DNA of 64,000 nt, from positions 62,001 through 126,000 of the IMG/VR virus record IMGVR_UViG_3300009430_000004; one strand, 5' to 3'. The number at the start of each line of letters is the position of its first letter. The stretch's first letter is position 1. The notes under the pieces are model-generated. The model did no database searches and had not been told where the DNA came from. It worked only from the letters and a program-made list of their open reading frames with translations. The position numbers were made by a program, and so were the translations under genes. Positions 3,340-34,704 of the stretch are shown here, piece after piece.

Positions 3340-4392
3340 TTAATCTACTTTTTTATACCTGAATGCATTTACGCAGACAGCTTTGTAAGTGTTATTTCTT
3401 TCAGTAACTGCTTCTTTCCAAGCTCTGAACCAGTCAAGAGCAATTGTCTTAGCTTCGCTGAATAATGAAGCTTCTTTCTGAGCAACTTGAACCATTCTAG
3501 CAGCAACGTTTCTAACGTGCTCAGACTTGGTTTTGTCACCAACAGCTTTATCTGAAGCCTTTTCCCATTCTCCAACCTTCTTAATTTTCTTTTCGAAAAT
3601 CTTATCACAATCTTTGATTGCGTCTTCAGCATTCTTAAGGTCTTTGTTAGTCTTAAGAACATTGATGATCTCTCCGATGTTAATCTTAACATCTTCCTTA
3701 TCATTGTCATCAGTAGCTCCATCTCTGAAGTGTGCAAATAGAGCTTCTTTAAACTCTTCATTGTCAAGACTTCCGCTACCAGTAGCATAAGTTCCTCTTA
3801 AGGAATCAAAGAAATCAGATCTTTCTTCATCAATTCTGTCAATGAATTTGTCAAGATCTTCTATCTTAGATCCAGCAGGTTCTGGAACTGCGAATTTCTT
3901 TTCAATTTCTTTCTCTGCAACTTCAAGTAATGTTGAAGCCTTATCACCGTCAAGGTTAGTGTACTTGAACATCTTATACTCATAACCTGAAAGGTTAAGT
4001 TTTCTAAGTTGCTTCTCGTACTTTGTTGCAAACTCTTTGCCTGATTTAAACATTCCGTCGAAGAATCTTACAACAGAAGCAAAGAATTGCTTAATTTTTC
4101 CCCACATTTTCTCGAGGAACGTTTTTATTTTAGCCCAAACGTCTTTGACCATTCCTTCAGCAACAGCTTCGAATTCAGCCATTCTAGCCTCTACTGCACT
4201 TGATTCGGTTAAAATCTTAAGATCTCTCTTAAGGCTAAGTTCTTCCATATCGAGAGCGTGTATAGACTCAATAATTGCTAATTGATCTTCAAAGCCTTCT
4301 TGAATAGCCAGTAAATCTCCATTATTTTCGCAAGAATAACCCTCGAAAACAGGAGCAGTTAAATTAGTAGTATTTCTACCAAATATACTCAT
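3340..4392 (-). CDS. Putative internal head/virion protein (paralogue)
   Basis: 350 aa; ILTE/AVAE followed by VWAKIKTFLEKMWGKIKQFF; late-type promoter at 4424-4435. Confidence 0.7.
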   Translation of the reverse strand: MSIFGRNTTNLTAPVFEGYSCENNGDLLAIQEGFEDQLAIIESIHALDMEELSLKRDLKILTESSAVEARMAEFEAVAEGMVKDVWAKIKTFLEKMWGKIKQFFASVVRFFDGMFKSGKEFATKYEKQLRKLNLSGYEYKMFKYTNLDGDKASTLLEVAEKEIEKKFAVPEPAGSKIEDLDKFIDRIDEERSDFFDSLRGTYATGSGSLDNEEFKEALFAHFRDGATDDNDKEDVKINIGEIINVLKTNKDLKNAEDAIKDCDKIFEKKIKKVGEWEKASDKAVGDKTKSEHVRNVAARMVQVAQKEASLFSEAKTIALDWFRAWKEAVTERNNTYKAVCVNAFRYKKVD

Positions 4393-21600: not shown

Positions 21601-24600
21601 CTACACCCATTAGGGATTCTCCTATTGCAGGTCCCACTACTTTGAGGGTTTCACCGACTGCTTTAAAAGCGTCGCCTACCATACCAACTATTTGTCCAGG
21701 TAACTTAACAAGAGATATTACAGCAGTCTTAGCTATATTACCTAATTCAATAGCAAAGTTTTTAATTCCTTTGGCTATTGTAACAGGAACGCTAAGTATT
21801 GCCTTAGCAGCATCCTTTATACCTGTTCCTATTTTACCTATAAACTCACCAACTGTCCTAAGTTTTGCAACAAAGAACTCTTTAATGCTGTCTAAAGGTT
21901 TGTATAACATCTTTCTTACTCTGCCAAAGAACCCAACTCTGTCTTTGTTAGCTGGGTCAGCAGCACCATCATCTGAAGTATTAGCCATTTTCTGAACTGA
22001 TTTTCTGATTTTATTGATATTGCTACCAACACCGTTTAATTGTCCATTTACTTCAGAAGCTATATTTCTAACATCTGTTGCGATTCTAGCAAGAAGAGCA
22101 TCTTTACCCTTAGGTAATCCTTTGCTTATATTATTAACCAATCTATTGGAATCGTTAACTGGTCCAGTTGCTGAGCTTGCAGGAACTGACTGATGCCCAG
22201 CCGCTTCACGAATAGCATTGGCTTGTTTTGCAGGCACTACCATTTCACCTTGGTGAAGGTTAGCCTTATAATTATCATGAGGTACATTGTCTATACCAGA
22301 TGCATGTGAATGTTCTTCATCTTCTTCTTTGTCTTTATTCTTTCCGAACCCTAAAGCATCTTTTAATCCACTAAATTTTTCACCTATGTTATAAGTTAAT
22401 CTATCTGTTGGATTAGGTTCTGTTGCTTCATTATCTATGGTCGGAACTGGAGTATCTGAGCTTAATGTTAGCGTAGAGGATTTATGACCTGGGATTATCC
22501 TAGATGCTATTTTGTCTATTGCATTATTGATTGATTCTAAGAATCCCGATGTTCTACGCATTTCATTAGATATATCATTTTGAAGTATATCTCTATTCTC
22601 CTGAGAAACTGTTATAAGCTCTTCCATTCTATTATTAGTCTCTTCTTGAGCCTCAATGACTGGTGTAGCTCCAGCTTCTTCCTTTTTCTCCTCTTCGGTT
22701 TTAGGTTTAACTCCGAATAATTTAGCTAAAGTTGAATCTAGTGAACCACTTTCGATAGCTTTCCTAATCATCTTCTTCTGCTTCTTATCCAAAGATTTGA
22801 AGTCTACTGACCCACCTTCACCAAGCAATTGCTCTAGAGGAACTTTTGTCATATCTGATATTTTTCTAGCAATCTCTTCTTGTGGCATTCCTATCTTAGA
22901 CTTATTTTTACCTTCAAGATCAGGTCTGTAAATACGAGACACATCCACATCAAGATAATTACCATCTTTGTCTTTTAAGAAATTGTCATAATCATATTTT
23001 AACCCTAGGCTTCTATAGATATCTAAACGCTGTTTCTTAGCTTCGAGTAATGCTCTTTCTTTGGAGAAAGTTTCATCCTGCTCTTTATTCCTCTTAGCTA
23101 TTTGCTGCATTCTCTCACCATTAGGGTCTGCATAATCTGCCCCGTTTTCACCGTATCTTGCGGCATCACGGGTTTGTTTATTGAAATACATGTCATTCAG
23201 ACGCCCAAAGAATCCTTTACCTACTTTATTTCCGTCTTTATCTTTAGTAGAGAATAGACCAAGTTTTTCTCCTTTAGCTCGTCTTTCTTTGAAATTAAGT
23301 ATTCCACCTTCTTTAACAACATTTCCATTCTCATCAACAGTTTCTTTTCCATTCCAGCCTTGGTCTATCATGGAAGTTAAACCTCTTTGAGCATGTTTTT
23401 TAGTTAATCCTTGTGATAACATATTTAATCCTTTAAATGGAGCAGCTAATAGATTACCCATTATCTTCCCACTAAAATTAAGGATTTTTGAGAAGAAACC
23501 TTTTAATGGTTTCATAACCTTATCTTCCATAAACTTTCCAAACGGCATTCCAACATGTTTCTCAAATACATTTCCAATAAAACTAGTAAAGTTTTCCCAG
23601 CCCTTCTTAAACATATCTTTCATGTTAGTTACCATTATTGAGAATTCTTTCTTTAATGGTGCTATAGCATCAGCAAATGGATTTGCAATGCTCTTAGTGA
23701 ACCATTCTTTGATGTTGAGATTGATTTCTGAGAATTTAAGTTTAAGAGGTTCTTGGACTTCTAGTTTAAACCAGTTAGAGAATTTACCAATTAAACCACC
23801 TTGTCTCTTATTTGTCTTTTCATCAAACTCTCCAAATATAGCTTTTTTCCATTTCTCGGATGAAAGAGCAATACCAGCAGCCGCACCAAGTACAGCACCA
23901 CCAAGCGGACCTCCTGGAAGCATTAAAGCACCCATTATACCCAACTTGCTAGTTACTAACCCAAGGGCGGAACCCCCTATAATACCAGCTCCAACATTTC
24001 CAAGCAAATCTTTATTTTTATTGGTACTTCTAAATATCTTATTGAATATGCCACCATCTCGTTTTCCATCAGCACCTTTTTCACCAAATAGGAACTTTTG
24101 AACTGCTTCTGAACGATATAACATTGAACCTGCTATACCCATAACAGCTCCTCCTACAGGACCACCAGGAAGGAAGAATGATGGTAACATACCAAATCCT
24201 AATAATGGTTTCATAGCTCCTACAACAGCTCCACCAACCATACCAGCCTTATTCTTCTTGAAGAATTCTTGTGTAGACTTGCTTATAACTCCTCCTGTTC
24301 TCTCACCCATAGAATCTTTATCACCGAATAACCAGTTTTTAAATCTATCAGATTGAGTTAGAAAGCCTAAAGTTGAACCTACAATTGCTCCTCCAATAGG
24401 ACCGCCAGGTAATAGTAATGAACCCAATAATCCGAGCTTACCACCCATTAGTAAACCAGCACCACTTCCGATAATACCAAATGCTAATGATTTAGGTGCT
24501 CGTTCTTTTATCTTCTTTGTCATTTCATCAAATGCGATGTAATTATTATTCTTAGTACCGTCTTTGTTTTTCTTTGGACCAAACATGGCTTCACTAAAAT

Positions 24601-27526
24601 TAGTAAATCCATTCTTCAATGCATTGAATGCCCCAGTAAATACACCTTTCTGTAAATCAGGGTCATTAGCATTTTTATCACCAAAGAGATATATTTTTAA
24701 TGTATCCTTGAAACCACCAAATACTTTCTTCACTTCTCCAAATACACTATTTTCATTATCACCGAATGAAACTCCTGCTCTATTAGTATATCCTTTACCA
24801 GTAAAGTAATACTTAGCACCGTCCCATATATCGAGCATCTCATTGGCTGTATCAGACATTAAACCGCCTTCTCTAGCACCATTTTCACCAGTAGGTCTAC
24901 CAAAGATAAAGTCGGCAAGTTTTCCCATTTTCTTCTGTAAGGAAGTGTAAAAATCACTTTGTTTTATCTTAGTAAACATACCGTCTTTACCAAATAGAGC
25001 TTCTTTAGCAGGAAGGAATATATCGTTCTTTATCCAATTACCAAAGTCAGCAAATTTACCTTTAAGATTAGCAAGAGTTTGATCCATAAAAGATGAGCTT
25101 GGAGAGCCATCTTTGGATGCACCGAATACTATCTTAAACATAGCGGAGTCTATCTTATCAAATACACCTTTCATTAACTTAGCAGGTGTTTGTAAAATGT
25201 CGTCAACTTTCTCTCTTATCATGTTATATTTATCTTGAGCTCCACCTTTAAGGAACTTAGCGAACCATTTAGCAACAGTTTCCTGTTGATCTGGATTTTC
25301 TTGCTCGCTTTTCATTTTAGCATATGCTTCAGCATGTTCCCTGAGCTCTTTGTCTGATTTATCAGATAAATCAATAGATGAACCAAATACCCATTTACCA
25401 TCTTCCTCTTTCTTTCTTTTCTGTTCTTCGGATAACCTTTGAACAGCCTTGTTATATTTAGAGTTATTGGTAGCGTAGTCTGTTTCTTCTTTCTTCATCT
25501 TAGCAGTTCTTTCACGGATTCTATCTAACGGTGAAGGTGTCCCCCCTGAAGGTGTTGGGGGTGTTCCTGACCCATTCCCTGGAGATGTTGAGCTATCTCC
25601 ATTAGGAAACACAATGATGCCGTCAAGTAATATTTTCTTAATATCTCTTAAATAATCAAGAGTATTATGACCAAATTTATCAACAGCATTCATTCCAAAT
25701 CCTCGTCTAACCTCATATTTACCAGTCGTAGAATCACGCTTAATATGCTCATCAAAACCTGATGCCTGGAACGCAGACACACCATATTTATACTGGTTTT
25801 CTTCAGCCTCTGTCATAAATCTTTCGAGACCTTTTCTAGCATTAATATGAGAAGTACCAGCCATATCAAGTAATGTATTATTTGGTAATGACATTACTAT
25901 TTGTTTGAATAACCTCTGCATATCATTGCTCTTAAACTGATGAACATTCTTTAACTCATCAATAGTATTTCCTTCAGCATCCTTCTCATTAAAAGGATTT
26001 ACACCATAAGGTGTTTTAGCTAATTTAACGAAGAATTTATCTATATCTTCCCTAAATGCATCTCTATCCTTATTGTCTTCGATTAGGAATGCTTCAGAAC
26101 GAGTTTTAATTTCATCTATTACATCACTGAAGTTAGAAAGAATTGTTCTTTCTTGCTCCTTTTTGAATTCCTTTGACATTTCAAATACTGAACGGAATGA
26201 ACCTTTTTCATAGTCAAAGGCTTGCTCTTCCTTGCCAGATAAAGTGGCAAGTATCTTTCTCAAGTATGTTGGGATTACATCTGTGATGGCTTTCTTTGTG
26301 ACACCATCAAAGGGAACTGTCCCTTTCTTATATTGAGATAAATCAATAGATGTCTTAGTCTTAACATTTGCTCCAAATATTTGCCCTATGATTTGTAGAA
26401 ACGGATTATTAGAATTGAAAGCCAATCTATTAATCTTCATCAATAAAGCAGGGAAAAAATTTTGGAACGATTGATCCATATTTTCCATTGACTTCTTTAG
26501 GAAGCCAGGAATTAAAGATGCTACTATCTTGGTTGATATGAAACTAAGTGGTGATGCTGCCAAGAACTTCAATGTATCTGTATCTTCAAGCATTGATTTG
26601 ATTGGAGATAAGAACATGTTTGAGTCTATAGCATTACCAAGGTTTTTCTTCATCATATTCATGTAGCCTTTTACATTTAGACCACCCCTTGATAGTAACG
26701 CATTATCTAATGGATCTTCTTTAATTTTCTTTTCTTGTTCTTGGTCAACTCCCTTAGATGACACTGTTTGTAAATGTGTCAAAGTATCATTTAATACTTT
26801 AAGGTTTTCTTCATAGAATTTCAAAGAAGCTCCTATATATTTACCCATAGATTCACTTTGGAAATTGACCAAAAGACTTAAATTGGCATTCAGTGACTCC
26901 ATGCCTTGTACTATTGCGGAGCTAGTTTGTCTGTTTACAAGCAAAGCGTTTGATGAAAGTCCTATGTTAACATCATTAATAGACTGGGCAGCTTGTATAG
27001 TTGCCTGAGTTTGTCTTTCTAATGCTTTAACCATAGGATTATTTTTATTCATTGAAGGCTCTACTACATTGACAGTAGTGTTTTTATTAACAACTGGACT
27101 GGATATATCATCCATGGAATCTGATAGACTAAAGTCATCATTACCCATTTCAAAGTCTCCGTCCCCAAAGTCGAAATCGTCTAAGCCTTCGTTATAGATA
27201 GCTTCTTGTCGCTCTTTATTATAAATCTTACCAGACTTAATATCTTCAAGAGCATTTTTCAAAACATCCCTACCTATGCCTATTTGACTATTAGCATTTA
27301 TAGAATCTGTGACCCTTTTACCAATGGATCTAAAGTTTCTTATCTCTGTAAAGAGTTCGCTAACAGTATCTTCATTTGAGGTAACGAATTCCATTGATGC
27401 TGGCATCATCTCATTGACTAATTCTGTAGATGTATAGCCTAATGACTTACCAACATTCTTAAACCAATTTAAGGCTCCACTTGACTTAGTTGTAAGTGAA
27501 CCTTTATTCTTATTCTTTGTCGCCAT
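15605..27526 (-). CDS. Giant tape-measure-like tail protein with C39-like peptidase and lysozyme-like domains
   Basis: 3973 aa; Trp-periodic helical repeats; HASGIDNVPHDNYKANLHQGEMVVP motif typical of tape measure proteins; YYSQGDDRWG...GCGPTSMAMV...GHFVV...INDP (C39-like); HESGG...SIGIIQW (lysozyme-like). Confidence 0.8.
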   Translation of the reverse strand: MATKNKNKGSLTTKSSGALNWFKNVGKSLGYTSTELVNEMMPASMEFVTSNEDTVSELFTEIRNFRSIGKRVTDSINANSQIGIGRDVLKNALEDIKSGKIYNKERQEAIYNEGLDDFDFGDGDFEMGNDDFSLSDSMDDISSPVVNKNTTVNVVEPSMNKNNPMVKALERQTQATIQAAQSINDVNIGLSSNALLVNRQTSSAIVQGMESLNANLSLLVNFQSESMGKYIGASLKFYEENLKVLNDTLTHLQTVSSKGVDQEQEKKIKEDPLDNALLSRGGLNVKGYMNMMKKNLGNAIDSNMFLSPIKSMLEDTDTLKFLAASPLSFISTKIVASLIPGFLKKSMENMDQSFQNFFPALLMKINRLAFNSNNPFLQIIGQIFGANVKTKTSIDLSQYKKGTVPFDGVTKKAITDVIPTYLRKILATLSGKEEQAFDYEKGSFRSVFEMSKEFKKEQERTILSNFSDVIDEIKTRSEAFLIEDNKDRDAFREDIDKFFVKLAKTPYGVNPFNEKDAEGNTIDELKNVHQFKSNDMQRLFKQIVMSLPNNTLLDMAGTSHINARKGLERFMTEAEENQYKYGVSAFQASGFDEHIKRDSTTGKYEVRRGFGMNAVDKFGHNTLDYLRDIKKILLDGIIVFPNGDSSTSPGNGSGTPPTPSGGTPSPLDRIRERTAKMKKEETDYATNNSKYNKAVQRLSEEQKRKKEEDGKWVFGSSIDLSDKSDKELREHAEAYAKMKSEQENPDQQETVAKWFAKFLKGGAQDKYNMIREKVDDILQTPAKLMKGVFDKIDSAMFKIVFGASKDGSPSSSFMDQTLANLKGKFADFGNWIKNDIFLPAKEALFGKDGMFTKIKQSDFYTSLQKKMGKLADFIFGRPTGENGAREGGLMSDTANEMLDIWDGAKYYFTGKGYTNRAGVSFGDNENSVFGEVKKVFGGFKDTLKIYLFGDKNANDPDLQKGVFTGAFNALKNGFTNFSEAMFGPKKNKDGTKNNNYIAFDEMTKKIKERAPKSLAFGIIGSGAGLLMGGKLGLLGSLLLPGGPIGGAIVGSTLGFLTQSDRFKNWLFGDKDSMGERTGGVISKSTQEFFKKNKAGMVGGAVVGAMKPLLGFGMLPSFFLPGGPVGGAVMGIAGSMLYRSEAVQKFLFGEKGADGKRDGGIFNKIFRSTNKNKDLLGNVGAGIIGGSALGLVTSKLGIMGALMLPGGPLGGAVLGAAAGIALSSEKWKKAIFGEFDEKTNKRQGGLIGKFSNWFKLEVQEPLKLKFSEINLNIKEWFTKSIANPFADAIAPLKKEFSIMVTNMKDMFKKGWENFTSFIGNVFEKHVGMPFGKFMEDKVMKPLKGFFSKILNFSGKIMGNLLAAPFKGLNMLSQGLTKKHAQRGLTSMIDQGWNGKETVDENGNVVKEGGILNFKERRAKGEKLGLFSTKDKDGNKVGKGFFGRLNDMYFNKQTRDAARYGENGADYADPNGERMQQIAKRNKEQDETFSKERALLEAKKQRLDIYRSLGLKYDYDNFLKDKDGNYLDVDVSRIYRPDLEGKNKSKIGMPQEEIARKISDMTKVPLEQLLGEGGSVDFKSLDKKQKKMIRKAIESGSLDSTLAKLFGVKPKTEEEKKEEAGATPVIEAQEETNNRMEELITVSQENRDILQNDISNEMRRTSGFLESINNAIDKIASRIIPGHKSSTLTLSSDTPVPTIDNEATEPNPTDRLTYNIGEKFSGLKDALGFGKNKDKEEDEEHSHASGIDNVPHDNYKANLHQGEMVVPAKQANAIREAAGHQSVPASSATGPVNDSNRLVNNISKGLPKGKDALLARIATDVRNIASEVNGQLNGVGSNINKIRKSVQKMANTSDDGAADPANKDRVGFFGRVRKMLYKPLDSIKEFFVAKLRTVGEFIGKIGTGIKDAAKAILSVPVTIAKGIKNFAIELGNIAKTAVISLVKLPGQIVGMVGDAFKAVGETLKVVGPAIGESLMGVAKIFSGAMGAVKETMIGFGKGVGSLFFQLGKGTGELLVKFGKMTMGLVETVGNTIGKTFTIVTDFGLEMTKRTTDMLFAVGSNIADFTLKTITGVGEKLAEVGNTLWQIVTSPLKFLSQGLGKLLGIQEQKVVVVGGTLDVVREVQSIGTNRMAAPRSLETNTDSLVQSVRIVGSDVCLPVYLCPEKIVSSFEKIQPFAVRVDQSNGVLATALSPDSMKEAFNRITPLPVRIDTDMQGIERQSGFSVSSLVGGSSTAMVAPEFKNNNLAASVLAGMDKFDESNDKEEEAKKQNERLESEAAARQAHASRLTAANVQAANALKEEKQHERNWKDRILELLAGLGKDTRQHTTDWADIFGKKGLFMVGALTLLPLLKKAMEWLLGKGNDSRTDVGGTTIVNSDLVEHGTRAVGYGIKKASEHLMAPLKNSIQEFKKTFQGVKKVWDEVFPPIKKKGIEMWDDVSEKAHVVWDDIAEKSKGVWDNIAEKFTGTWDNIAKKFFPNIVEKGVNVADDAARATAKNKGPISKVVDKVKQFGNKGDVEAGEVIMETSNVSFVDEATEGTSKIAQAVNPANDVVKKAGGGKVVDFAAAKAAKESGEDVTKIAVDGADDVVDAVNKGRIEKFTKMAMDAVDNIARMFEKKFPKAAKAIGPAMDVLGKVLKKVKWVKYLPKVAKGLAKIAAAAATALASDAVWATWGAVTGGFEAAHLFKVDSDEVDWIMRAISSGMKALLNVSWFFVIEILNDICVEMTGVDFIQMMATQIYKAITSDEKGAKLEQAQADFKAEVDAYNEANGTKLSVDAYNDKVNKTVGQHIADGVSNTWKGIKAGASWVGDKTSKAWNATTGALSWAGNKIGEGAQWAGNKIAQGASVAWDATKKGAAWAGEKISQGAQWAGEKIQQGASVAWDATKKGAKMVWDNSALGGAVNAFKNDDMVKQNFNLKGDGKITTGMRAASGAAEALEKLSLGLLDAEKTAKTFYGIGLRFNDFMEGTKKFIGDNLVEPAKKAWTSAKEKINEKLEEFKKEASETWNGIKEGIGKQWNSAKETIGGALSAVGQYTSEKWEALKTNIGSAWDSAKTVVGEKLEAFKQNASETWDALKTNIGNAWSSAKETIGGKLEEFKANTSETWGNIKSNIGDAWGTAKGIIGEKLEAFKAEAGETWESIKSGVGKQWESAKSLIGTAAANIKDTAGNIWNSMPEPVKDRLGEAKETITTGAKKLADGAKELWGNIGDTISDKWKDIKKHLTEGLDRIGGFFKGIGNFFKNGFDSVKNFFTGRASDELDKLGWGEGGYGNVPVPDTKYNKSLNKRVPKVEGGGFGVESDTINNFAYYSQGDDRWGRYAYDHSPQFGTRSENPTLKARGCGPTSMAMVATQLTGKRYEPPQMADLAQKGGYSSSAGTSWGYFDKMASMFSLQKTEINPSSQRSQLQSMLDQHVPIILSGTRKHSADQSPFTSSGHFVVAVANDGPNGIVINDPRGPAYSKTYNLNTVLDEARKGWGFRYTGGSLPDPRNPEAYTPSSSPIGGTMENPTILDLFGKMSEAFSLYSENLYSGENKQLSWGDSFLTGSSSSDGYVGNFNIDFIPKNVQDAILKKTAELTVKHESGGKYTYGRNDVNASTGQRISPSIGIIQWRGGNAKAIMDRMLQEMPDNPEARYFASKNWNDSSPWSQSEQDRLEKYLASNMQVTKKVQDSFLLDHVKNRNLAPVYKYGVEPGKIKDPRSIAFLAEIANSGPALVKPFLERYSPTSATGKAEFQHFYNEFMSKSYWGPKSIYSNRLKSSFNSLVDWDPEQGGFGDRIVREPETILGGFGDMMCDITTKLTSSQRTSAPEKVQDVKGGFGDLTESITDTLNNALSGEGKIKSEGMRLPSFYEDPNPEVRSYMYGNSDIQKAGLSDDLLKTAIEVLRNIENNTGATSEGIKELNKKECVVNVITKSQTTTSIEGEDGEKPAGSTIVVAPPQTNNYINPIMGMANDRRNNKQQRDYQTAKGIAKGRTN
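17850..19150 (-). repeat. 11/22-residue Trp-periodic coding repeats within the tape-measure-like protein
   Basis: Examples: GAQWAGNKIAQGASVAWDATKKGAAWAGEKISQGAQWAGEKIQQGASVAWDATKK, and repeated KLEEFK..ASETW..IK..IG..W.SAK units. Boundaries approximate. Confidence 0.8.
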
Positions 27527-27653: not shown

Positions 27654-28205
27654 TTATTTCTTTTTACCGTTAACTTTGCTCTTAAGCCATTTTGGGCATT
27701 TGGATTTCTTTTGAAGAATCTTGTGTGCCTTCTTTTGAACATGGATCTTTTCCTTGCTTCTGATATCTGTGAACTCTCCAACTGATTCGCCTACTTCGTC
27801 AAGCAGCATAGAACCTATGAAGTTTTCCCTTGGGATAAAATCAAATTTCTTTCCTGCATCCATGTAAACGTATGGAAGCTCTGAACAGATTTCATACATA
27901 CCGTCAACATTTCTGATCTCATAAGAAGCATCAAGAACTTTAGCAGCAGCCTGCTTGTCAACACCGAAATCCTGAAGTATAACTTTGAGCATGTTTCTGA
28001 ATTCTTGAACTGGGAATACATCTTTCTTAACCAGCTCACCGTCTTTTGTGGAAACAGCTTCCACTTTGTATCCAACTTCATTTAACCAAGCTTTTGCTAG
28101 CTTGTCGAAGTCTGACCTGCTGAATGATCTAACAGGTTTTCCTTTCTTTGAAACTGAAACGTTTGCTTTTATTTCAGCAAAAACTTCACTGAATGATTTA
28201 GCCAT
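27654..28205 (-). CDS. Hypothetical basic protein, possibly DNA-binding
   Basis: 183 aa; perfect SD GGAGGT, own AACT-N6-TA promoter variant and strong terminator; Lys-rich termini. Confidence 0.55.
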   Translation of the reverse strand: MAKSFSEVFAEIKANVSVSKKGKPVRSFSRSDFDKLAKAWLNEVGYKVEAVSTKDGELVKKDVFPVQEFRNMLKVILQDFGVDKQAAAKVLDASYEIRNVDGMYEICSELPYVYMDAGKKFDFIPRENFIGSMLLDEVGESVGEFTDIRSKEKIHVQKKAHKILQKKSKCPKWLKSKVNGKKK

Positions 28206-28278: not shown

Positions 28279-28512
28279 TTACACGCTAATATCTATTACT
28301 AACTTGTCACTGGATTTGCCATCCTTGTCCTTTTTGTCCTTCTTTTTCTTTTTATCTTTGTCCTTCTTATCTCTGTCTTTATCCTTTTCTTTCTTATCTT
28401 TGTGTTTCTTATCTGACTTTTCACTAATCTTCTTTTCATAGCCTTTCATCATGTCAAACACATCGTCAATGACAAATTCATCAATATTAACTTCGCCTTT
28501 TCCTTTAGCCAT
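28279..28512 (-). CDS. Small K/D-rich low-complexity early protein
   Basis: KDKKEKDKDRDKKDKDKKKKKDKKDKD; SD GGGAGG; early-type promoter at 28559-28568. Confidence 0.65.
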   Translation of the reverse strand: MAKGKGEVNIDEFVIDDVFDMMKGYEKKISEKSDKKHKDKKEKDKDRDKKDKDKKKKKDKKDKDGKSSDKLVIDISV

Positions 28513-28638
28513 ATTTTTTCTCTCCCTCCCTTACGTTTTATTATTACTATACGCTGTAATAATATATATTTATTATACACATTACATTTCATATGTATGT
28601 TCCTAGTATATTAAAATCGTATTTTCGACACCCTCAAA

Positions 28639-28648
28639 TATATATTAT
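28639..28648 (+). promoter_or_regulatory. Early-type phage promoter TATATATTAT (representative copy)
   Basis: Exact intergenic 10-mer at + 28639, 29198, 35015, 35445, 38601, 41166, 45842, 48804, 49325, 54161 and - 7346, 28559. All lie upstream of small non-structural genes; resembles the phiKZ early motif TATATTAC. Confidence 0.75.
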
Positions 28649-28747
28649 TATTGTGTACATACATAAATAGATATTAGATTTGTATGTTCCGCTAGTAAAT
28701 TTGGTGCTAGTGAAAAATATTTTTGATTCTGTGGGAGGAATTAAATT

Positions 28748-29134
28748 ATGTTATTATCAATGTTAAAAATGAGAAAAATCAGATCTATCATCGCTACTGA
28801 ATTGAATAGAAACGCACATATTATAAATTCAGTTTCTTACCCTGTAACAGTTAATGAGCAAATGAATCATACTGCATGCAATGAGCATCGTGAGTATGTA
28901 CCATATATATCATTATCATGTTGGCATCATGGGAAGGATGGTGAGAAGATTTACAATCACACAAGCGGAATAACTATATATGCTGGTAGCATATTATATA
29001 TCTGTAAAACTAAGAAGCTTGACGTTGAATCTTATACAAGGAGTATCATGTCTCATTTAATACATAAGATTGCTACTTGTCAAGATCCAACATATCCAAC
29101 TGAACTTCAAAAGCCTGCTACTAAAACAGCATAG
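28748..29134 (+). CDS. Hypothetical early protein
   Basis: 128 aa; SD GGGAGG; early-type promoter at 28639-28648. Confidence 0.6.
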   Translation: MLLSMLKMRKIRSIIATELNRNAHIINSVSYPVTVNEQMNHTACNEHREYVPYISLSCWHHGKDGEKIYNHTSGITIYAGSILYICKTKKLDVESYTRSIMSHLIHKIATCQDPTYPTELQKPATKTA

Positions 29135-29241
29135 GCTTAATAAGAGATAAAGGTTGTTTATTGAACCTTTATTTTTTTTACTTAAGTGGATTTTAATTAT
29201 ATATTATACAATTGTAATAATAAATAAAAGGAGATGACTTT

Positions 29242-29574
29242 ATGGCTAAAGTTTACGGACATGTTGTCCACACTCAAAGAGTATCAACAAATATTGATGA
29301 CTTACAGCGTATTGCTGAGAATGGGGATTTATCTAAGAAAGACTTAAGGGTATTTCTGTTTCTAGCTTGTAGATTAGAAACCGAGAGGATTAAGAAAATA
29401 GATAAGAAGCAAATGGCTAAGAGCCTTGATTTATCTAAAGATGAAGTTAAGAAATGTTTAGACACATTAGAAGAACATGGTATTATAGAACGTGATTCTG
29501 ATGACCATGTTGAAGATGGATACCGATTCACATATACTAAGAATATGAGAAGAATGGATTCTATTCAACTATAA
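29242..29574 (+). CDS. Winged helix-turn-helix DNA-binding protein
   Basis: LSKKDLRVFLFL...KKQMAKSLDLSKDEVKKCLDTLEEHGIIER is a wHTH pattern. Confidence 0.75.
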   Translation: MAKVYGHVVHTQRVSTNIDDLQRIAENGDLSKKDLRVFLFLACRLETERIKKIDKKQMAKSLDLSKDEVKKCLDTLEEHGIIERDSDDHVEDGYRFTYTKNMRRMDSIQL

Positions 29575-29584
29575 ATAAATTAAA

Positions 29585-29631
29585 AAATAAAATAAGAGAT
29601 ATAGGTATATACCTATATCTCTTATTTTTTT
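29585..29631. terminator. Bidirectional intrinsic terminator between convergent genes
   Basis: aaaataagagatataggta-ta-tacctatatctcttatttt, a perfect palindrome. Confidence 0.8.
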
Positions 29632-30169
29632 ATGATTGTATTTTTTTCTTAAATTTCTCAAAAGTATCTCTGAGAGCTATATTAGTCTTAATATGAAGAA
29701 TTGGGTCTATTTTACCGTATCTTTTAAAATGGTCTGGTTCAAAGTCTCTTTTCATAGCTCTTAATGTAGATAAAGCAAATGATGTACCTAAGATTATAAC
29801 GGCATGTTTCTCAATTTCATTAATATCCATTCTCATTGTCTGTACACCGTCAACTATTGCTCGTCTACCTTTAAGTAACTGCATCATAATAGGAGTAACC
29901 TTTGAGGCATACTCTTCATCAGATAAGTTTTTAAGTGTCGTAACACCCATTATTTTTTTAACCTCATCTGTTAAAATATCCATTTCTATGAAATCGCAGT
30001 TATATTCCTGAGCTATTTGTGAACCGTAAGTGGATTTACCACTACCTGATAAACCTGCAATAAATAGAAGATTTACTTCACCAGACTTAAACTTATCAAA
30101 GTTATACTCAAAATTTTTATCTGATAATATAGCACCTTCTTTTAATATTAAACCTTTTAAATATCCCAA
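29630..30169 (-). CDS. P-loop nucleotide-kinase-like domain; probably the frameshifted C-terminus of the upstream RNAP gene
   Basis: LLFIAGLSGSGKST Walker A motif and IVDG; the TTG start has no SD; the frame stays open upstream to about 30253, overlapping the end of the beta gene. Confidence 0.7.
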   Translation of the reverse strand: MGYLKGLILKEGAILSDKNFEYNFDKFKSGEVNLLFIAGLSGSGKSTYGSQIAQEYNCDFIEMDILTDEVKKIMGVTTLKNLSDEEYASKVTPIMMQLLKGRRAIVDGVQTMRMDINEIEKHAVIILGTSFALSTLRAMKRDFEPDHFKRYGKIDPILHIKTNIALRDTFEKFKKKIQS

Positions 30170-30228
30170 CTCGCTATCTATTATAAATCCAGATTCCTTT
30201 ATTGATGAATATTCACCTCTGGATATAG

Positions 30229-33200
30229 TTAATTCTTCATGTTTTTTATTTGCCTAACAGCAACTAATTTATCTCCTTCTACTTTACATGTTGGTTTGTT
30301 TGATGGTTTAATATAATGACCAACAACGGTAAGCTTATTATTCTTATCCAATATCGGACATACAATTTCACCCTCACTAAATTCTTTCTTAGTAAAATAG
30401 CTTGGATTATCATCTACATTCTTTGCTTTATAAAGATTGATTAATGTAGCTTCAAGCAATGCTCTTCCATCGTTTCCTCTATAATCTTTTCCACAGTCAG
30501 GGCATGTACCAGTTTCATTCCATGCTTCTTCATAACCTATGAGTGCTCCACAATGAACACATCTAGCCATGATATCTCCCATAGATTCTTTCACAGGCTC
30601 CCATGGTTTACCAGAATAGATTTCCTGTAACTTACGCTTCATTTCAACCAAAACCTTATTACCAAACATGGTAAGTAGTATAGATGGTGTCATACGAGCT
30701 AAGACAGCTCCAGGAGCTATAACTGAAGAAACTTCTTCCTGTGATCTAAACTCTGAGTAAGGTTCATAACCTTCAGGTATAACCTCACCAATGATTGACT
30801 TTAGTGCTGTAAAGAACGTTATCTTATCTCCAACACCTACAGTATCTTTATATTTAATATAGAACTCGATTAATACACCTTCTCCAACTTCTGTTCCTTT
30901 AATCTTACCGTCCTTAGCCTCTATTTTTCCAGTGGCATCATTTAACAGAACACCTGCTTTGAATACAGAGTCGGATTTATCGTATTTGTTAATAATCTTC
31001 TTTTTCTTATTTATTTTTTCATAGTAATCTGAAACTATCTTTCTTAATGTCGGTGAAAGTTCTTCTAGTTCTACTGTTGAATATATCTTTATATCTTCAA
31101 TGACACCTGAGTATTTTGATTTAATAGGTGTCTTACCAAGAGACTTAATCTCTTCCTTAAGTTCATTTCCTACAGAAGCTAGGAACTTATTCAATGAATC
31201 GTCATCGAATGATGTTTCAAACCTAATTAATTCATCACCAACTTGTACCTTCTGTCCAATATCAACTATATAATCAACATTGGCGTTTTTACCAAGGGAT
31301 ACTACTTTCTGCATAACTACATCAGCAGCCATATCATAGCTTAGCTTTTTAGTTACGAAGGTTGAGTCTTCATATGTTGAATAAGTTGATAAACATGCTA
31401 CTTTTTGTAATGAACCTATATTAAATCTATTTCCATCTAATGGTGATTCACTAAAGAAGTGTTTATCAGATGCAAGAATATCATTTTCCTTAAACTTCTG
31501 ACCTTTCTTTAAATTACATGATAGTTGATTTGATAGGAAGAATCCACCTGCACCATTCTTAACAACTCTTGGCTGTGTATCAATAGCTTGAACTGATCCA
31601 TCCTTATACTTAACCATTGCAATTCCAGCATCTTCGTTAACTTCTACAACTTCCCCATCCAACTTAGCTCTAACAATAAAGTCGTTAGAAAGATGGTAAT
31701 GGATTACTTGTTCAGATCCGTTTGAAATCAATACTGGTGATGATTTGGCTATAGGTATAATGTGTTTGGACTGTTTAGTAGCCATCGCTGTTCTAATAGA
31801 GTCGTCACGGGTAACCCCTAGAGGGGATAATAACTCGGCAGGAGAGAATAGATTAGCATCTGTAAGCTTCTCTAACCTATCATCATTTACTTCAATATAA
31901 CCTCTTGGACTTACAATGTTTGGTTCAAGGGATAACTGTCTAACAACACCACAGTTTGCATCTGGAGAGGTTGATATAGATAGAATTCCCATCATAGTTG
32001 GGTCGTAAGAACGTTTGTCCTGAGTATAAGCTTCTGGAAGGTTCATACCTACATGACCCTTTGGAGTTATTGCTCGGGACTTTTCAAGTTCAACGATAGG
32101 ATTTAATATACTATAATCCTCAACAGTCTGTAATGTTAACAGTTTCTTCAACACTATATCCTGAGGTACTGAAATCTTAACTGGATTGTTATTGTACGCT
32201 GTAATTCTATATTGAGAATAAGCGTCAGCTATCTGTTTATATAGAATAGCATTCACTATTTCATTTGAACGCACTCTGTAGATATTCATATTATTTTCTT
32301 TGATTGATGAATTATCTGCAAGCAGAGAATTCGCAAATAATATTAAGCTAACGAAATCTGTAGGATAATTTAAATCCTCAAGAACTTCTTTAGTTATAGG
32401 GTCTATCATAAAGTCATAGAAGTTGTCAAATGCGTTACCTATCATCTTATTATTAAACATGATTTCGAAGATTGATAAGTATGCATCTTTACCATCAAAG
32501 TCGGCATAATCAAATGCTTTAGTTGGTATATCTGCGAAGGCATTTAGTAACAATGAATTCTCATAAGGATATTTGTCATATACAAGATATCCATCAGCGA
32601 ATTGTACAACACCTTCATTATTTGATACTTTAGGACGAGTGTCACTAAAGTGATGTCTTATATTTGCTTTTCTTAGTACACTGGTTATACCTTCAACATA
32701 ACCTAATAGCAATAATACAGGAACATTCTTGCTCATGATTGTTGCCTTAGTGTACATAAACTTCTTACCAGCAGTTGCAGAATCAAAATCCTCTACAAGT
32801 TTACCTTGGTCGCATGATAAGATAAAGTCTATAATATCCATTCCACCCATCATCTGAGTATTCAAGTCCATCAATATAGGTTCATTATTATTAAGGAAGA
32901 AACCTATACAGAAGTCGTTTTCTGTGAGTCTGTATTTTTTAGTATCAATTCTTGCCCGAACTTCATCCTGATTGAAAACAAACTCCGCATTATTAACCTT
33001 TATAATGCTATAAATCTTTGATAACTCGTCATATTCGAGTATAGACTTATATTTTGAGTTAGCAGCTAAGTTGTTACCATACTTAACCTTAACATTACTA
33101 CTTGGATTCAACAATGCTTTCTTAAACTTCTCAATCTTAGATGAAACCTTAGTACCAAATCTCCTAATAAACATCTTGTTGTAATTACTACAAACTTGAA

Positions 33201-34704
33201 CTTCATCAGGTCCAGTTTTAACTACGGGTTTCATGAAGAGTTGTTTTACGATAAGCTTTTTATTTCCACCAAGATACATAAATTTGTCATCTATAAACTT
33301 AGGCACATCAAATCGTAATCTGTGACGTACTCTATTGGCATCTTCAAGGTCAACTATATAAGTTTCCTTGAAGTTCATTTCATCTGAGCTGTCCACAACT
33401 TCGATATTTCTAACATAAACAGGTATTGACTTATCGTTAAGGGAAGTAATTATATTAACTAAATCCTTCTTAGATAAGGTTTCGTTATATGCTTTTTCAA
33501 AGTGTGGATATTTAATAGTTGTCATATTCTTATTGGTTGTTGTAACCTTATTCGATACATCAATTGATGGAATAGCGATTGATTTAGTATCCATCTTTTG
33601 AATTTCCTCAAGAGTCATTCTCTCAAGCTTTATTTTCCTCTGTTTTTCACGAAGTTCCTGGTCTCTCTTTATAGATAGAGTTGAACGACCTGTTTTTTGA
33701 CTTTGGTTAATATCATATACTTTCTTCAGAAGCTGTTGGTCAACAATCAGCTTATCTTCAAGCTTTTTCTTAATATCGTCAGCATCATCTTTAATATTAA
33801 CCTTCTCTTCTTCCATGACATCTTCAAGTCTATCCTTAACACTTTCTTCAAGCTCAGGACTTTCCTCTTCGTTTCCAGTGAACTTGTACGTTTCAATGAA
33901 TTTTGCAGCAACATCATTGAATATCTCGTATCTCTTAGCATCTTCCTCTATTTGTTTTTCATCATCCAATGCTGAAAGGTCAGCATGTATTTTTGAAATT
34001 TCTCTACGGAAGGCTGTGAATGATTTATCATCACATTGAGCAGGATTAACTCTCATCATTGAGTCATTATTATAGAAGACTATGTTGACATCCCCTAATT
34101 CCTTAAATTTGTCGAAGTATTTATACATCGCAAAATAAAGAAGTAGAACAGGATTATCAAAATTTAATCTCCTATTCTCAGCAGCTCTCTTTAATCCAGC
34201 TATCCTCCAGTCATCCATTCCTACAACGATTGTTTTTATTTTATAACCGTCCAATCGAGGATCATTAATGATATTCTTGAGATAATCAATATACCCTTTT
34301 GTTTTTAAGTCATATTTTAGCTTTCTGGCAAAATCAAAATATATAGTATTGTAAGTAGCTAGGTCAAAATACACATTCCTTTCATTAAGATTACTTATTG
34401 AAGGGACAGTATTTAGGAATTTAATTCCTGACTCTAGCTCACCATATATCGCTTCTCTCTCTTTTCTGTAGATTTTCCTATATGTCTTATTAGCTAACTT
34501 ACCTTTATAAATAGAGTCCATATAATAGAAATGGAACTTATTATTGTGATAAAGGTTTTTGTTTTCTATAAGACGCATAGAAGCATCCAGAGAACCGTTA
34601 TTGATGAATACAATACTATACATACTTTGAGCTTTTTGATCTACAGGCAATTGTGCCTTTTGTTTAAACACTTTCAAGTGCGGAATATCCGAAATAAAAA
34701 TCAT
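30229..34704 (-). CDS. rpoB: Multisubunit RNA polymerase beta-like subunit (probably virion RNAP) with long N-terminal extension and C-terminal Zn ribbon/SET-like appendage
   Basis: STSPDANCGVVRQL, RTAMATKQSKH, TYEDSTFV, VGDKITFFTALKSIIGEV and PGAVLARMT correspond to bacterial beta motifs (ETPEG.NIG, RALMGANMQRQ, NFEDS, GDKMAGRHGNKG, PLGVPSRMN). Late-type promoter at 34738-34749. Confidence 0.9.
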   Translation of the reverse strand: MIFISDIPHLKVFKQKAQLPVDQKAQSMYSIVFINNGSLDASMRLIENKNLYHNNKFHFYYMDSIYKGKLANKTYRKIYRKEREAIYGELESGIKFLNTVPSISNLNERNVYFDLATYNTIYFDFARKLKYDLKTKGYIDYLKNIINDPRLDGYKIKTIVVGMDDWRIAGLKRAAENRRLNFDNPVLLLYFAMYKYFDKFKELGDVNIVFYNNDSMMRVNPAQCDDKSFTAFRREISKIHADLSALDDEKQIEEDAKRYEIFNDVAAKFIETYKFTGNEEESPELEESVKDRLEDVMEEEKVNIKDDADDIKKKLEDKLIVDQQLLKKVYDINQSQKTGRSTLSIKRDQELREKQRKIKLERMTLEEIQKMDTKSIAIPSIDVSNKVTTTNKNMTTIKYPHFEKAYNETLSKKDLVNIITSLNDKSIPVYVRNIEVVDSSDEMNFKETYIVDLEDANRVRHRLRFDVPKFIDDKFMYLGGNKKLIVKQLFMKPVVKTGPDEVQVCSNYNKMFIRRFGTKVSSKIEKFKKALLNPSSNVKVKYGNNLAANSKYKSILEYDELSKIYSIIKVNNAEFVFNQDEVRARIDTKKYRLTENDFCIGFFLNNNEPILMDLNTQMMGGMDIIDFILSCDQGKLVEDFDSATAGKKFMYTKATIMSKNVPVLLLLGYVEGITSVLRKANIRHHFSDTRPKVSNNEGVVQFADGYLVYDKYPYENSLLLNAFADIPTKAFDYADFDGKDAYLSIFEIMFNNKMIGNAFDNFYDFMIDPITKEVLEDLNYPTDFVSLILFANSLLADNSSIKENNMNIYRVRSNEIVNAILYKQIADAYSQYRITAYNNNPVKISVPQDIVLKKLLTLQTVEDYSILNPIVELEKSRAITPKGHVGMNLPEAYTQDKRSYDPTMMGILSISTSPDANCGVVRQLSLEPNIVSPRGYIEVNDDRLEKLTDANLFSPAELLSPLGVTRDDSIRTAMATKQSKHIIPIAKSSPVLISNGSEQVIHYHLSNDFIVRAKLDGEVVEVNEDAGIAMVKYKDGSVQAIDTQPRVVKNGAGGFFLSNQLSCNLKKGQKFKENDILASDKHFFSESPLDGNRFNIGSLQKVACLSTYSTYEDSTFVTKKLSYDMAADVVMQKVVSLGKNANVDYIVDIGQKVQVGDELIRFETSFDDDSLNKFLASVGNELKEEIKSLGKTPIKSKYSGVIEDIKIYSTVELEELSPTLRKIVSDYYEKINKKKKIINKYDKSDSVFKAGVLLNDATGKIEAKDGKIKGTEVGEGVLIEFYIKYKDTVGVGDKITFFTALKSIIGEVIPEGYEPYSEFRSQEEVSSVIAPGAVLARMTPSILLTMFGNKVLVEMKRKLQEIYSGKPWEPVKESMGDIMARCVHCGALIGYEEAWNETGTCPDCGKDYRGNDGRALLEATLINLYKAKNVDDNPSYFTKKEFSEGEIVCPILDKNNKLTVVGHYIKPSNKPTCKVEGDKLVAVRQIKNMKN

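What the first reader, a model, noticed from the sequence alone, without database searches (positions are those of the whole stretch)
29630..30600. RNAP beta as a cargo polyprotein: Zn ribbon + degenerate SET domain + P-loop kinase, joined across a -1 frameshift at A_AAA_AAC
Seen: after the last RNAP motif (ARMTPS) the ORF continues with WEPVKES, a C4 Zn ribbon (CVHCG...CPDCG), RALLEA, then SYFTKKEFSEGEIVCPI...GHYIKPSNKPTCKVEGDKLVAVRQIK. At 30241-30247 the mRNA reads AUA AAA AAC, three codons before the stop. The -1 frame continues K/N-HEELTISRGEY...LILKEGAILSD... without a stop into the Walker-A ORF 29630..30169, whose TTG start has no SD. Known: SET domains read LFA.......GE.I...RYINHSC.PNC...A.RDI..GEELT.DY, so the shift completes the SET signature (AVRQIKKHEELTI); A_AAA_AAC is a documented -1 slippery heptamer (IS1, MMTV); phiKZ-type head proteases cut after Glu. 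Inference: the virion RNAP subunit carries accessory modules separated by x-x-E sites (VKE, LLE, LKE), packaged with it and released on maturation, with the kinase made at sub-stoichiometric level if the shift is programmed. The SET NHS motif is degenerate (KPS), so it may be inactive. A homopolymer sequencing error (A6 for A7) is an equally open explanation; the fusion would still be unusual.
Basis: partly seen in the sequence, partly recalled or inferred. Interest (0 to 1): 0.8.

Follow-up and report, generated by a model that had tools for sequence, protein, structure and literature searches.

The report
Phage RNA polymerase gene with broken add-ons
A giant groundwater phage has three extra protein modules (zinc ribbon, SET-like domain, P-loop kinase) added to the end of its virion RNA polymerase beta gene, and a real one-base shortfall in a run of A's now splits this once continuous gene, more likely a leaky mutation than a programmed frameshift.

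Summary
The 1491-aa RNAP beta ORF (30229..34704, minus strand) ends three codons after an in-phase A_AAA_AAC (30247..30241). The -1 frame is open from 30253 into the P-loop ORF (29630..30169).

Six relatives end the gene at or just after '...EIY' with no extension. One relative (P0003/L008) carries the middle domain in a single frame, and the window's -1 product aligns to it without a gap ('IKKHEELTI' against 'IKGKEELTI'). So the shift restores an ancestral frame.

That intact domain is SET-like, but the evidence is sub-threshold. Pfam SET is its only hit (E 0.01), and 98 of 100 ESM Atlas neighbours are viral SET clusters. The NH motif and the catalytic Tyr are missing.

The Zn ribbon and P-loop modules recur in large multi-module proteins of other jumbo phages.

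A6 stands in two datasets that differ by 4 SNPs in 10.5 kb, so a sequencing error is practically excluded.

Nothing specific supports programmed shifting. The site lies inside a conserved motif, there is no stimulatory structure, the relative has no heptamer, and an A7-to-A6 deletion would produce this heptamer and this register by itself. The protease-site idea remains untested.

The parts
30589..34704 (-). Core of the RNAP beta-like subunit (virion type), up to '...EIYSGKPWEPVK'. Relatives L020/L021 have their stop codon at the next codon.
   Evidence: best cultured matches are Staphylococcus phage SA1 beta (41% id) and AR9 g189, annotated 'virion RNAP subunit'. L004, L005, L006, SA1, L020 and L021 end here or a few codons earlier.
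30463..30588 (-). Junction 'ES' plus the C4 zinc-ribbon module (MGDIMARCVHCG...CPDCGKDYRGNDGR). The Cys codons are at 30559-61, 30550-52, 30502-04 and 30493-95. An internal GGGAG-N5-ATG lies at 30580..30568.
   Evidence: weak Zn-ribbon Pfam hits. P0005 56% id, P0006 53% id, both starting at the same 'ESMGD'. for the internal SD-like site.
30244..30462 (-). SET-like domain, the part read in the 0 frame (ALLEATLINLY...VAVRQIK).
   Evidence: 38% id to P0003 residues 90-160 (E 3e-15). Searches place the intact P0003 domain with SET; the window's truncated part alone is not recognised.
30241..30247 (-). A_AAA_AAC heptamer (an A6 run followed by C), the point where the frame changes.
   Evidence: The same 31-mer is present in L034, L035 and L036. 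The Logan contig is identical over 29601-31500.
30229..30240 (-). 0-frame tail M-K-N and the TAA stop.
30191..30241 (-). C-terminal strand and motif of the SET-like domain, read in the -1 frame (HEELTISRGEYSSIKES).
   Evidence: ungapped continuation of the alignment with P0003 ('IKKHEELTI' against 'IKGKEELTI')..
29630..30190 (-). Linker and P-loop NMP-kinase-like module. TTG is at 30169, Walker A GLSGSGKST at 30029..30055, and the stop at 29630..29632.
   Evidence: Pfam SKI 25.8 bits (cut-off 22.1), plus AAA_33 and AAA_17; a family with P0002, P0005, L022-L028; shikimate/gluconate/adenylate-kinase-like chains.
29589..29628 (.). 18-bp palindromic bidirectional terminator that closes the RNAP beta / P-loop transcription unit.
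   Evidence: No terminator-like site lies between 30229 and 30169.

Best explanation
**What it is.** The virion-type RNAP beta gene of this 218-kb groundwater jumbo phage has gained a chain of accessory modules at the place where its relatives have their stop codon. The chain is a C4 zinc ribbon, a degenerate SET-like domain and a P-loop NMP-kinase-like domain. These were once one continuous ORF of about 1691 codons.

**What happened to it.** In the sequenced population the ORF is interrupted by a real one-base shortfall in an A run (A6 where A7 would keep the frame). The break lies eight or so residues before the end of the SET-like core.

**What is made now (inferred).**
- The main product is RNAP beta + Zn ribbon + a SET-like domain that lacks its last motif.
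- The full-length fusion is made only when ribosomes slip -1 on A_AAA_AAC, probably at a low level as at the IS1 site.
- The kinase may also start on its own at TTG 30169.

**How the break most likely arose (inferred).** The shift is most likely an unselected, leaky indel in dispensable cargo, not a programmed device.

**What the modules are for (inferred).** They are of the kind found in large multi-module ('polyvalent'-like) proteins of other jumbo phages. They may ride into the capsid and the host on the polymerase.

**Shown versus inferred.** Shown: the module identities, the ancestral continuity of the frame, the reality of A6, and the absence of the extension in relatives. Inferred: packaging, processing, activity and the rate of shifting.
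For: - **Lineage-specific extension.** L004, L005, L006, SA1, L020 and L021 end at or just after '...EIY'. The L020 stop codon TAA sits exactly where the window has GAA.
- **Ancestral single frame.** P0003/L008-L009, seen in two samples, has the SET-like domain uninterrupted and terminal. The window's -1 product aligns to it without a gap.
- **Open -1 frame.** The 28 codons open in the -1 frame have probability 0.02 by chance.
- **SET-like.** Pfam PF00856 is the only hit for the intact homologue (E 0.01). Atlas gives 98 of 100 viral SET clusters, score 0.89, 171 shared features.
- **Modules recur elsewhere.** P0005 has Zn ribbon then P-loop. L022 is a 1684-aa protein with P-loop and an SNF2-like part. 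L023, L024 and L026 have three tandem P-loop modules. The window's own genome has a 710-aa protein with the same N-terminal domain but different cargo.
- **A6 is real.** A Logan contig is identical over the site. A second genome with 4 SNPs in 10,476 nt carries the same 31-mer in ENA, JGI and Logan assemblies.
- **Against a programmed shift.** There is no downstream structure (z -0.28), and L008 has no heptamer at the homologous place. An A7-to-A6 deletion would yield the heptamer, its phase and the exact register automatically (inference).
- **IS1 precedent.** A_AAA_AAC shifts in IS1 without a stimulator, and that element is cited as a low-efficiency case (PMC4066793).
Against: - The downstream ORF is fully intact over 203 codons, and the frame between the heptamer and the TTG has no stop. 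That also fits a maintained, programmed shift.
- The 0-frame stop lies only three codons after the heptamer, as at many programmed sites.
- The two genomes that share A6 are almost clonal, so neither decay nor selection can be read from them.
- No raw reads could be inspected, only contigs, so a minority A7 subpopulation is not excluded.
- The SET assignment rests on sub-threshold evidence from one homologue. Both AF2 models were unusable (pLDDT 40-44).
Confidence: 0.55

Rival explanations
1. Programmed -1 ribosomal frameshift. The phage keeps A_AAA_AAC so that most RNAP beta molecules end after the Zn ribbon and truncated domain, while a set fraction carries the completed SET-like domain and the kinase. 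This would fix the stoichiometry of a virion cargo.
For: - An in-phase canonical heptamer with a 0-frame stop three codons later.
- The -1 frame is open and encodes homologous sequence in exact register.
- The kinase ORF is intact but lacks an ATG and an SD.
- The same state is present in two genome variants.
- A_AAA_AAC is a proven site in IS1 (PMC4066793).
Against: - The site lies inside the conserved C-terminal motif of the domain, so the 0-frame product has a crippled domain.
- No stimulatory hairpin or pseudoknot (z -0.28), and no well-placed SD-like stimulator.
- The only relative with this domain reads it in one frame without a heptamer.
- Every 'for' feature follows automatically from a single A deletion in an A7 run.
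- The two variants are 99.96% identical, so they give no evidence of conservation.
Confidence: 0.2
2. Two ordinary genes. RNAP beta with its extension ends at 30229, and the P-loop kinase is made on its own from TTG 30169. The 'EELTI' stretch is a fossil of an older arrangement with no present role.
For: - In relative L007 the P-loop modules are separate, overlapping genes with their own SD and ATG.
- The stand-alone homologue P0002 starts six residues after the TTG position.
- 24% of 55 unambiguous gene starts in this genome lack any SD-like 3-mer, so a start without an SD is not rare.
Against: - There is no start codon at the position where family members have their Met; the window has TTA there.
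- TTG with no SD lies 59 nt after the upstream stop.
- The frame is open for 28 codons upstream (P 0.02).
- The SET-like domain would be left without its final motif, which the intact relative keeps.
Confidence: 0.2
3. Homopolymer sequencing or assembly error. The true genome has A7 and a single 1691-codon ORF.
For: An A7 run would give exactly the register seen in the homologue. Homopolymers are error-prone on some platforms.
Against: - A6 stands in the IMG/VR record and in a Logan contig at word depth about 11 with no differences.
- It also stands in ENA (MEGAHIT), JGI and Logan assemblies of a variant that differs at four other positions.
Confidence: 0.03

Closest known systems
Virion RNAP beta subunit of PBS1/AR9-type and phiKZ-type jumbo phages (AR9 g189)
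   Same: - Clear homology of the core.
- Intron-bearing relatives: AR9 g189 is joined from six pieces, and L008 has a group I intron.
- Iyer et al. 2021 (PMC7824862) report that Bacillus group-1 phages fuse an HD phosphohydrolase to the C-terminal part of their RNAP beta, so accessory enzyme fusions have a precedent.
   Different: - Here beta is one 1491-aa ORF.
- The appended modules are a Zn ribbon, a SET-like domain and a P-loop kinase, not HD.
- They are absent from the six nearest relatives examined.
Polyvalent proteins of phages and conjugative elements (Iyer, Burroughs, Anand, de Souza, Aravind 2017, cited in PMC7824862 as ref. 100; details from my own knowledge)
   Same: - Several unrelated enzymatic or binding modules are strung in one ORF.
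- The same modules are reshuffled between phages.
- They are proposed to be delivered with the DNA.
   Different: - The carrier here is an essential polymerase subunit, not a dedicated giant effector protein.
- No processing peptidase lies in this ORF.
- Delivery is not shown.
IS1 InsAB' -1 frameshift at A_AAA_AAC
   Same: Identical heptamer, no known stimulator, a nearby 0-frame stop, and a fusion product made in the -1 frame (PMC4066793).
   Different: - In IS1 the shift is conserved across a family and joins two functional domains at their boundary.
- Here it cuts a domain, and it is seen only in near-clonal genomes.
SET-domain lysine methyltransferases, including small viral SET proteins (PBCV-1 vSET; virion packaging of vSET is from my own knowledge)
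   Same: - The C-terminal half resembles the SET profile ('Y-I-K-x-S-x-x-P-x-C' against 'F-I-N-H-S-C-x-P-N-C', then 'EELT').
- Pfam and Atlas point to SET.
- It would be a virion-borne SET, as an analogy.
   Different: - The score is below the Pfam cut-off.
- NH is replaced by KP (window) or KS (P0003).
- There is no Tyr at the catalytic position.
- The distance between the GE..I and NH-equivalent motifs is shorter.
- The fold is not confirmed.
T4 Alt and internal proteins; phiKZ/SPN3US head proteins cut by the prohead protease after Glu
   Same: - Proteins packed in the head and injected, and cut at short x-x-E motifs (PMC10052503 reports A/S/G-X-E with Ser preferred at P1').
- This genome has a weak gp21-like protease match.
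- Junctions read VKE/S, LLE/A and IKE/S.
   Different: - All known SPN3US cleavages except the protease's own remove N-terminal propeptides (PMC10052503).
- The P3 residue here is V/L/I, not A/S/G.
- Motif enrichment is weak.
- No proteomic data exist.

Membership tests
SET domain (Pfam PF00856) | Profile match above the curated cut-off (22.4 bits) | tested here: not met
   The intact homologue P0003:75-179 scores 16.7 bits, E 0.01, and SET is the only family hit. The window's 0-frame part gives no hit. A six-frame search of the genome gives none.
SET domain (Pfam PF00856) | N-H-S/C motif that binds AdoMet, and the catalytic Tyr after E-L-x-F/Y-D-Y | tested here: not met
   The window reads IKPSNKPTC and EELTISRGEY. 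P0003 reads IKSSKNPNC and EELTIPEKD. NH and the Tyr are absent in both.
SET domain (Pfam PF00856) | SET fold with C-terminal pseudoknot | tested here: inconclusive
   The AF2 models have pLDDT 39.7 and 44.1, too poor for a fold search. Atlas feature search gives 98 of 100 viral SET clusters. The joined window sequence could not be submitted to the tools.
Programmed -1 ribosomal frameshift | X_XXY_YYZ heptamer in phase, with an open -1 frame that encodes a meaningful continuation | tested here: met
Programmed -1 ribosomal frameshift | Stimulatory element (downstream structure or upstream SD-like site) | tested here: not met
   The 91 nt downstream fold at -12.3 kcal/mol, z -0.28 against shuffles. 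Only an AGG lies 5 nt upstream.
Programmed -1 ribosomal frameshift | Conservation of site and shift among diverged relatives | tested here: not met
   L008/L009 read the domain in one frame through GAT ATA AAA GGA AAA GAA. The only genomes that share the shift are 99.96% identical.
Programmed -1 ribosomal frameshift | Trans-frame protein product | not testable with these tools
   No isolate, proteome or RNA run. The one run found is DNA contigs.
P-loop NMP-kinase-like NTPases | Walker A G-x4-G-K-[ST] and a kinase-family profile match | tested here: met
   GLSGSGKST is present. Pfam SKI scores 25.8 bits, above the 22.1 cut-off, though it covers only profile positions 2-66. The family profile matches shikimate, gluconate and adenylate-kinase-like chains, end to end for 3lw7 and 3h0k.
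P-loop NMP-kinase-like NTPases | Identified substrate site or lid | tested here: inconclusive
   Only Walker A, a hydrophobic strand 'EGVQ' and a conserved K-R are invariant in the family. No specific kinase subfamily is matched.
Jumbo-phage virion RNAP beta | Closest homology to the virion rather than the non-virion paralogue | tested here: met
   Best AR9 match is g189, annotated as a virion RNAP subunit. phiKZ-group matches carry labels such as 'structural head protein' and 'virion-associated'. A search with its C-terminal 596 residues found no paralogue in the genome.
Jumbo-phage virion RNAP beta | Presence in the virion | not testable with these tools
   The genome comes from a metagenome.
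Polyvalent / multi-module injected phage proteins | Unrelated modules in one ORF that recur in other combinations in other phages | tested here: met
Prohead-protease substrates | Cleavage motif at module junctions beyond chance, and a protease in the genome | tested here: inconclusive
   [VILMF]xES occurs 2 times in 326 aa, P 0.06. The broader [VILMF]xE[SAG] occurs 5 times in 326 aa against 0.37 per 100 aa in the genome. Peptidase_S77 scores 20.8 bits, below the 27-bit cut-off. The 'VNES' string is the native N-terminus of separate P-loop genes.

The most novel reading that the evidence does not exclude
A jumbo phage uses its virion RNA polymerase beta subunit as the carrier of a polyvalent-type effector chain. 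It sets the dose of the last effectors (a completed SET-like domain and a P-loop kinase) by a programmed -1 frameshift at A_AAA_AAC, and the modules are released by the prohead protease at x-x-E junctions after packaging.
Probability: 0.12. Interest if true: 0.85.

Novelty: new variant of a known kind. Interest (0 to 1): 0.55.

Why it matters
- **A new route for effector delivery.** If the virion RNAP beta carries enzymatic cargo, that would be a new way for jumbo phages to deliver effectors: a ride on the one protein complex that must enter the cell with the DNA.
- **The fusion is a real architecture.** The intact SET-like fusion in the relative (L008/L009) shows it is not only a broken gene.
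- **A shared module pool.** The module family links the polymerase to multi-module proteins shared among uncultured jumbo phages (Zn ribbon, P-loop kinase, SNF2-like, C92-like). These are almost unannotated in public libraries.
- **The frameshift is a cautionary example.** A single A deletion in an A7 run mimics every sequence hallmark of a programmed -1 site.

Tried and rejected
- **AF2 models.** Models of the window's extension (single sequence) and of P0003:78-179 with a 3-row alignment had pLDDT 39.7 and 44.1, so no fold search was run.
- **SET searches that gave nothing.** Pfam SET on the window's own 0-frame part, a six-frame SET search of the genome and of four related jumbo-phage records, and a profile of the domain against PDB sequences.
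- **tblastn against cultured phages.** The extension and P0003's domain found nothing.
- **Word-indexed protein searches.** The extension within full-length RNAP and P0003's domain found only themselves.
- **Atlas search with the truncated window domain.** The hits were scattered and non-SET.
- **Downstream RNA structure.** Not different from shuffles.
- **Protease-motif enrichment.** Weak.
- **Sequencing-error reading.** Rejected.
- **Relatives of a virus record.** They cannot be drawn by the genome search.
Full report
**Setting.** The window is bases 62001-126000 of a 218,088-bp IMG/VR virus record with direct terminal repeats, 33% G+C. The one public run that holds it is a groundwater metagenome. 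The ORF in question (30229..34704, minus strand, 1491 aa) is a beta-like subunit of the multisubunit RNA polymerases of jumbo phages. Its best cultured matches are Staphylococcus phage SA1 beta (41% identity over 596 aa) and Yersinia phiR1-37, followed by phiKZ-group genes labelled 'structural head protein' or 'virion-associated'. The AR9 match is g189, annotated as a virion RNAP subunit. A search with its C-terminal 596 residues found no second copy in the genome.

**The observation.**
- After '...ARMTPS...KRKLQEIY' the ORF continues SGKPWEPVKES, then a CxxC...CxxC unit, RALLEA, and a stretch of about 80 aa that ends VAVRQIK.
- The mRNA then reads AUA AAA AAC AUG AAG AAU UAA.
- A_AAA_AAC lies at 30247..30241 in the canonical phase.
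- The -1 frame is open from 30253 to 29630 and contains the Walker-A ORF. Its first canonical start is TTG 30169, with no AGG/GGAG-type Shine-Dalgarno 4-18 nt upstream.
- An 18-bp palindromic terminator follows at 29589..29628, and none lies between the two ORFs.

**The extension is lineage-specific.** Three IMG/VR relatives end the gene at '...EIYED', '...IYDEK' or an equivalent position. They are L004 (77% identity over the compared C-terminal stretch), L005 (71%) and L006 (44%). Phage SA1 ends there as well. L020 and L021 end '...EIYTGKPWEPTK', with their TAA exactly where the window has the GAA of 'VKES'. The region between the RNAP gene and the conserved K-rich and 183-aa genes differs in every relative. 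So window 28600-30610 is a variable spot.

**The shift restores an ancestral frame.** An exhaustive HMMER search with the 126-aa extension found five proteins.
- P0003 is the C-terminal exon of a relative's RNAP beta. It lies on contigs L008 and L009 from two samples, and the gene there is interrupted by a group I intron (Rfam 81 bits).
- P0003 shares 'GKPWKPVTES', lacks the Zn ribbon, and carries the next domain in one frame up to its stop: '...KDIKGKEELTIPEKDTLKQYLDE'.
- The window's canonical -1 product ('...RQIK-K-HEELTISRGEY...') aligns with it without a gap across the shift.
- The same register would come from an A7 run.
- The open -1 frame has probability 0.02 by chance.
- Together these show that the two ORFs were one.

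**Is the domain SET?**
- For the intact P0003 domain, Pfam SET is the only family reported at E up to 10. The E-value is 0.01 and the score 16.7 bits, below the 22.4-bit cut-off. It covers profile positions 36-102.
- The ESM Atlas feature search gives 98 of 100 neighbours as viral SET clusters, with score 0.89 and 171 shared features.
- The window's truncated part alone is not recognised. This fits the loss of the final motif.
- Both proteins lack the NH pair and the catalytic Tyr.
- The AF2 models were useless.
- I call it SET-like and probably not a working methyltransferase, with about 0.8 confidence in the homology.

**The other modules.**
- The Zn ribbon is 53-56% identical to a unit in P0005 (710 aa) and P0006 (855 aa), starting at the same 'ESMGD'.
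- P0005 continues with a P-loop module of the window's family.
- That family (alignment A4) occurs once in a 1684-aa protein with an SNF2-like part (L022). It occurs three times in tandem in 1121-1136-aa proteins (L023, L024, L026), and also in L025, L027 and L028.
- In L007 the same modules are separate overlapping genes, each with an SD and 'MYVNES...'.
- The profile matches shikimate, gluconate and adenylate-kinase-like chains, and Pfam SKI passes its cut-off.
- The window's own genome has a 710-aa protein with the N-terminal C2H2 + DUF7487-like domain of P0005 and P0006 (61% identity), but with other cargo, including a C92-like part.
- So there is a pool of modules that are shuffled among carrier proteins. 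The nearest described concept is the 'polyvalent protein', and fusion of an HD domain to RNAP beta in Bacillus jumbo phages is a precedent (PMC7824862).

**Real or error?** A Logan contig of run X1 is identical over 29601-31500 at word depth about 11. A second genome differs from the window at 4 of 10,476 positions and has the same A6 31-mer. It is represented by an ENA contig of 218,197 bp, a JGI contig from sample 3300025106, and a Logan contig from SRR5747425. A sequencing error is practically excluded. Only contigs could be inspected, so a minority A7 subpopulation cannot be excluded.

**Programmed or not?**
- For: an in-phase heptamer, a close 0-frame stop, an intact downstream ORF, and an exact register.
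- Against: the site cuts a conserved motif, so the main product has a crippled domain.
- Against: there is no downstream structure (z -0.28).
- Against: the one relative with the domain has no heptamer.
- Against: the modules are dispensable in the relatives.
- Against: all the 'for' points follow from one A deletion in an A7 run.
- In-phase heptamers are frequent in this A+T-rich genome (210 per 63,317 positions).
- A_AAA_AAC shifts in IS1 without a stimulator and is cited as a low-efficiency case (PMC4066793). Some full-length protein is therefore likely to be made either way.
- I put a leaky mutation at about 0.55, a programmed shift at 0.2, functionally separate genes at 0.2, and an error at 0.03.

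**Protease sites.**
- The junctions read VKE/S, LLE/A and IKE/S.
- A weak T4 gp21-like match lies at G000:60172-60282.
- The jumbo phage SPN3US cuts after A/S/G-X-E with Ser preferred at P1', but almost only to remove N-terminal propeptides (PMC10052503).
- Enrichment of the motif in the extension is weak.
- 'V/I-N-E-S' is the native N-terminus of free P-loop genes.
- The idea is open but not supported.

**Verdict.** This is a real, lineage-specific accretion of polyvalent-type modules on a virion-type RNAP beta, with a genuine frameshift that is most likely not programmed. It is a new variant of known kinds.

Noticed in passing
L008:1048-1309 (also L009): A group I intron (Rfam RF00028, 81.1 bits, E 4e-21) interrupts the relative's RNAP beta gene between '...GVGDKIT' and 'FFTALKS...'. 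The window's gene has no insert at that place. AR9 g189 is likewise joined from six pieces.
   Followed up: partly
G000:C1:48986-51118 (outside the window; locus L031:1492-3624): A 710-aa modular protein. Its C2H2 + DUF7487-like N-domain (with a D...E-x-K string) is 61% identical to P0005. A helical part and a C92-like (YiiX) part shared with P0006 follow. The junctions read IVNES and ILES.
   Followed up: partly
L023:4374-6197, L024, L026; L007:2230-2360: Three P-loop modules are fused in tandem in one ORF in some jumbo-phage contigs. In L007 the same modules are separate overlapping genes. In the fused forms the former start Met is still visible ('...KEEDSN-MYVNES...').
   Followed up: partly
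window 28600-30610: A variable spot between the RNAP beta gene and the conserved K-rich 77-aa (28279..28512) and 183-aa (27654..28205) genes. Here it also holds two plus-strand ORFs: 28748..29134, and 29242..29574, which has a weak DUF4423 match in a precomputed annotation. L004 has repeat-protein genes there, and L005 has nothing.
   Followed up: partly
window 29589-29628: A perfect 18-bp palindrome with T runs on both sides, a bidirectional terminator between the convergent P-loop ORF and ORF 29242..29574. The Logan contig breaks at it.
   Followed up: yes
window 15605-27526: A giant 3973-aa ORF next to the RNAP gene. A precomputed annotation of the identical gene gives Peptidase_C39_2 and a weak Apolipoprotein match. 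It has Gly-rich membrane-like repeats and a lysozyme-like C-terminal part. It is probably a virion or ejection protein.
   Followed up: no
G000:C1:60172-60282 (just upstream of the window): A weak match to the T4 gp21 prohead protease family (PF03420, 20.8 bits, below the cut-off) in a 203-aa open frame. The nearby paralogous ORFs at window 2240-3319 and 3340-4392 each have two [VILMF]xES motifs within their first 61 residues.
   Followed up: no
window 27372, 29146, 33005, 35834: The only four differences in 10,476 nt between the window's genome and the ENA/JGI/Logan variant. The one at 33005 changes Ile567 to Ser in RNAP beta.
   Followed up: yes
window 30568-30580: GGGAG, five bases, then ATG (Met1379) inside the fused ORF. 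This could allow separate initiation of a free Zn-ribbon/SET-like protein. The GGGAG is also forced by the conserved M-G-D codons.
   Followed up: no
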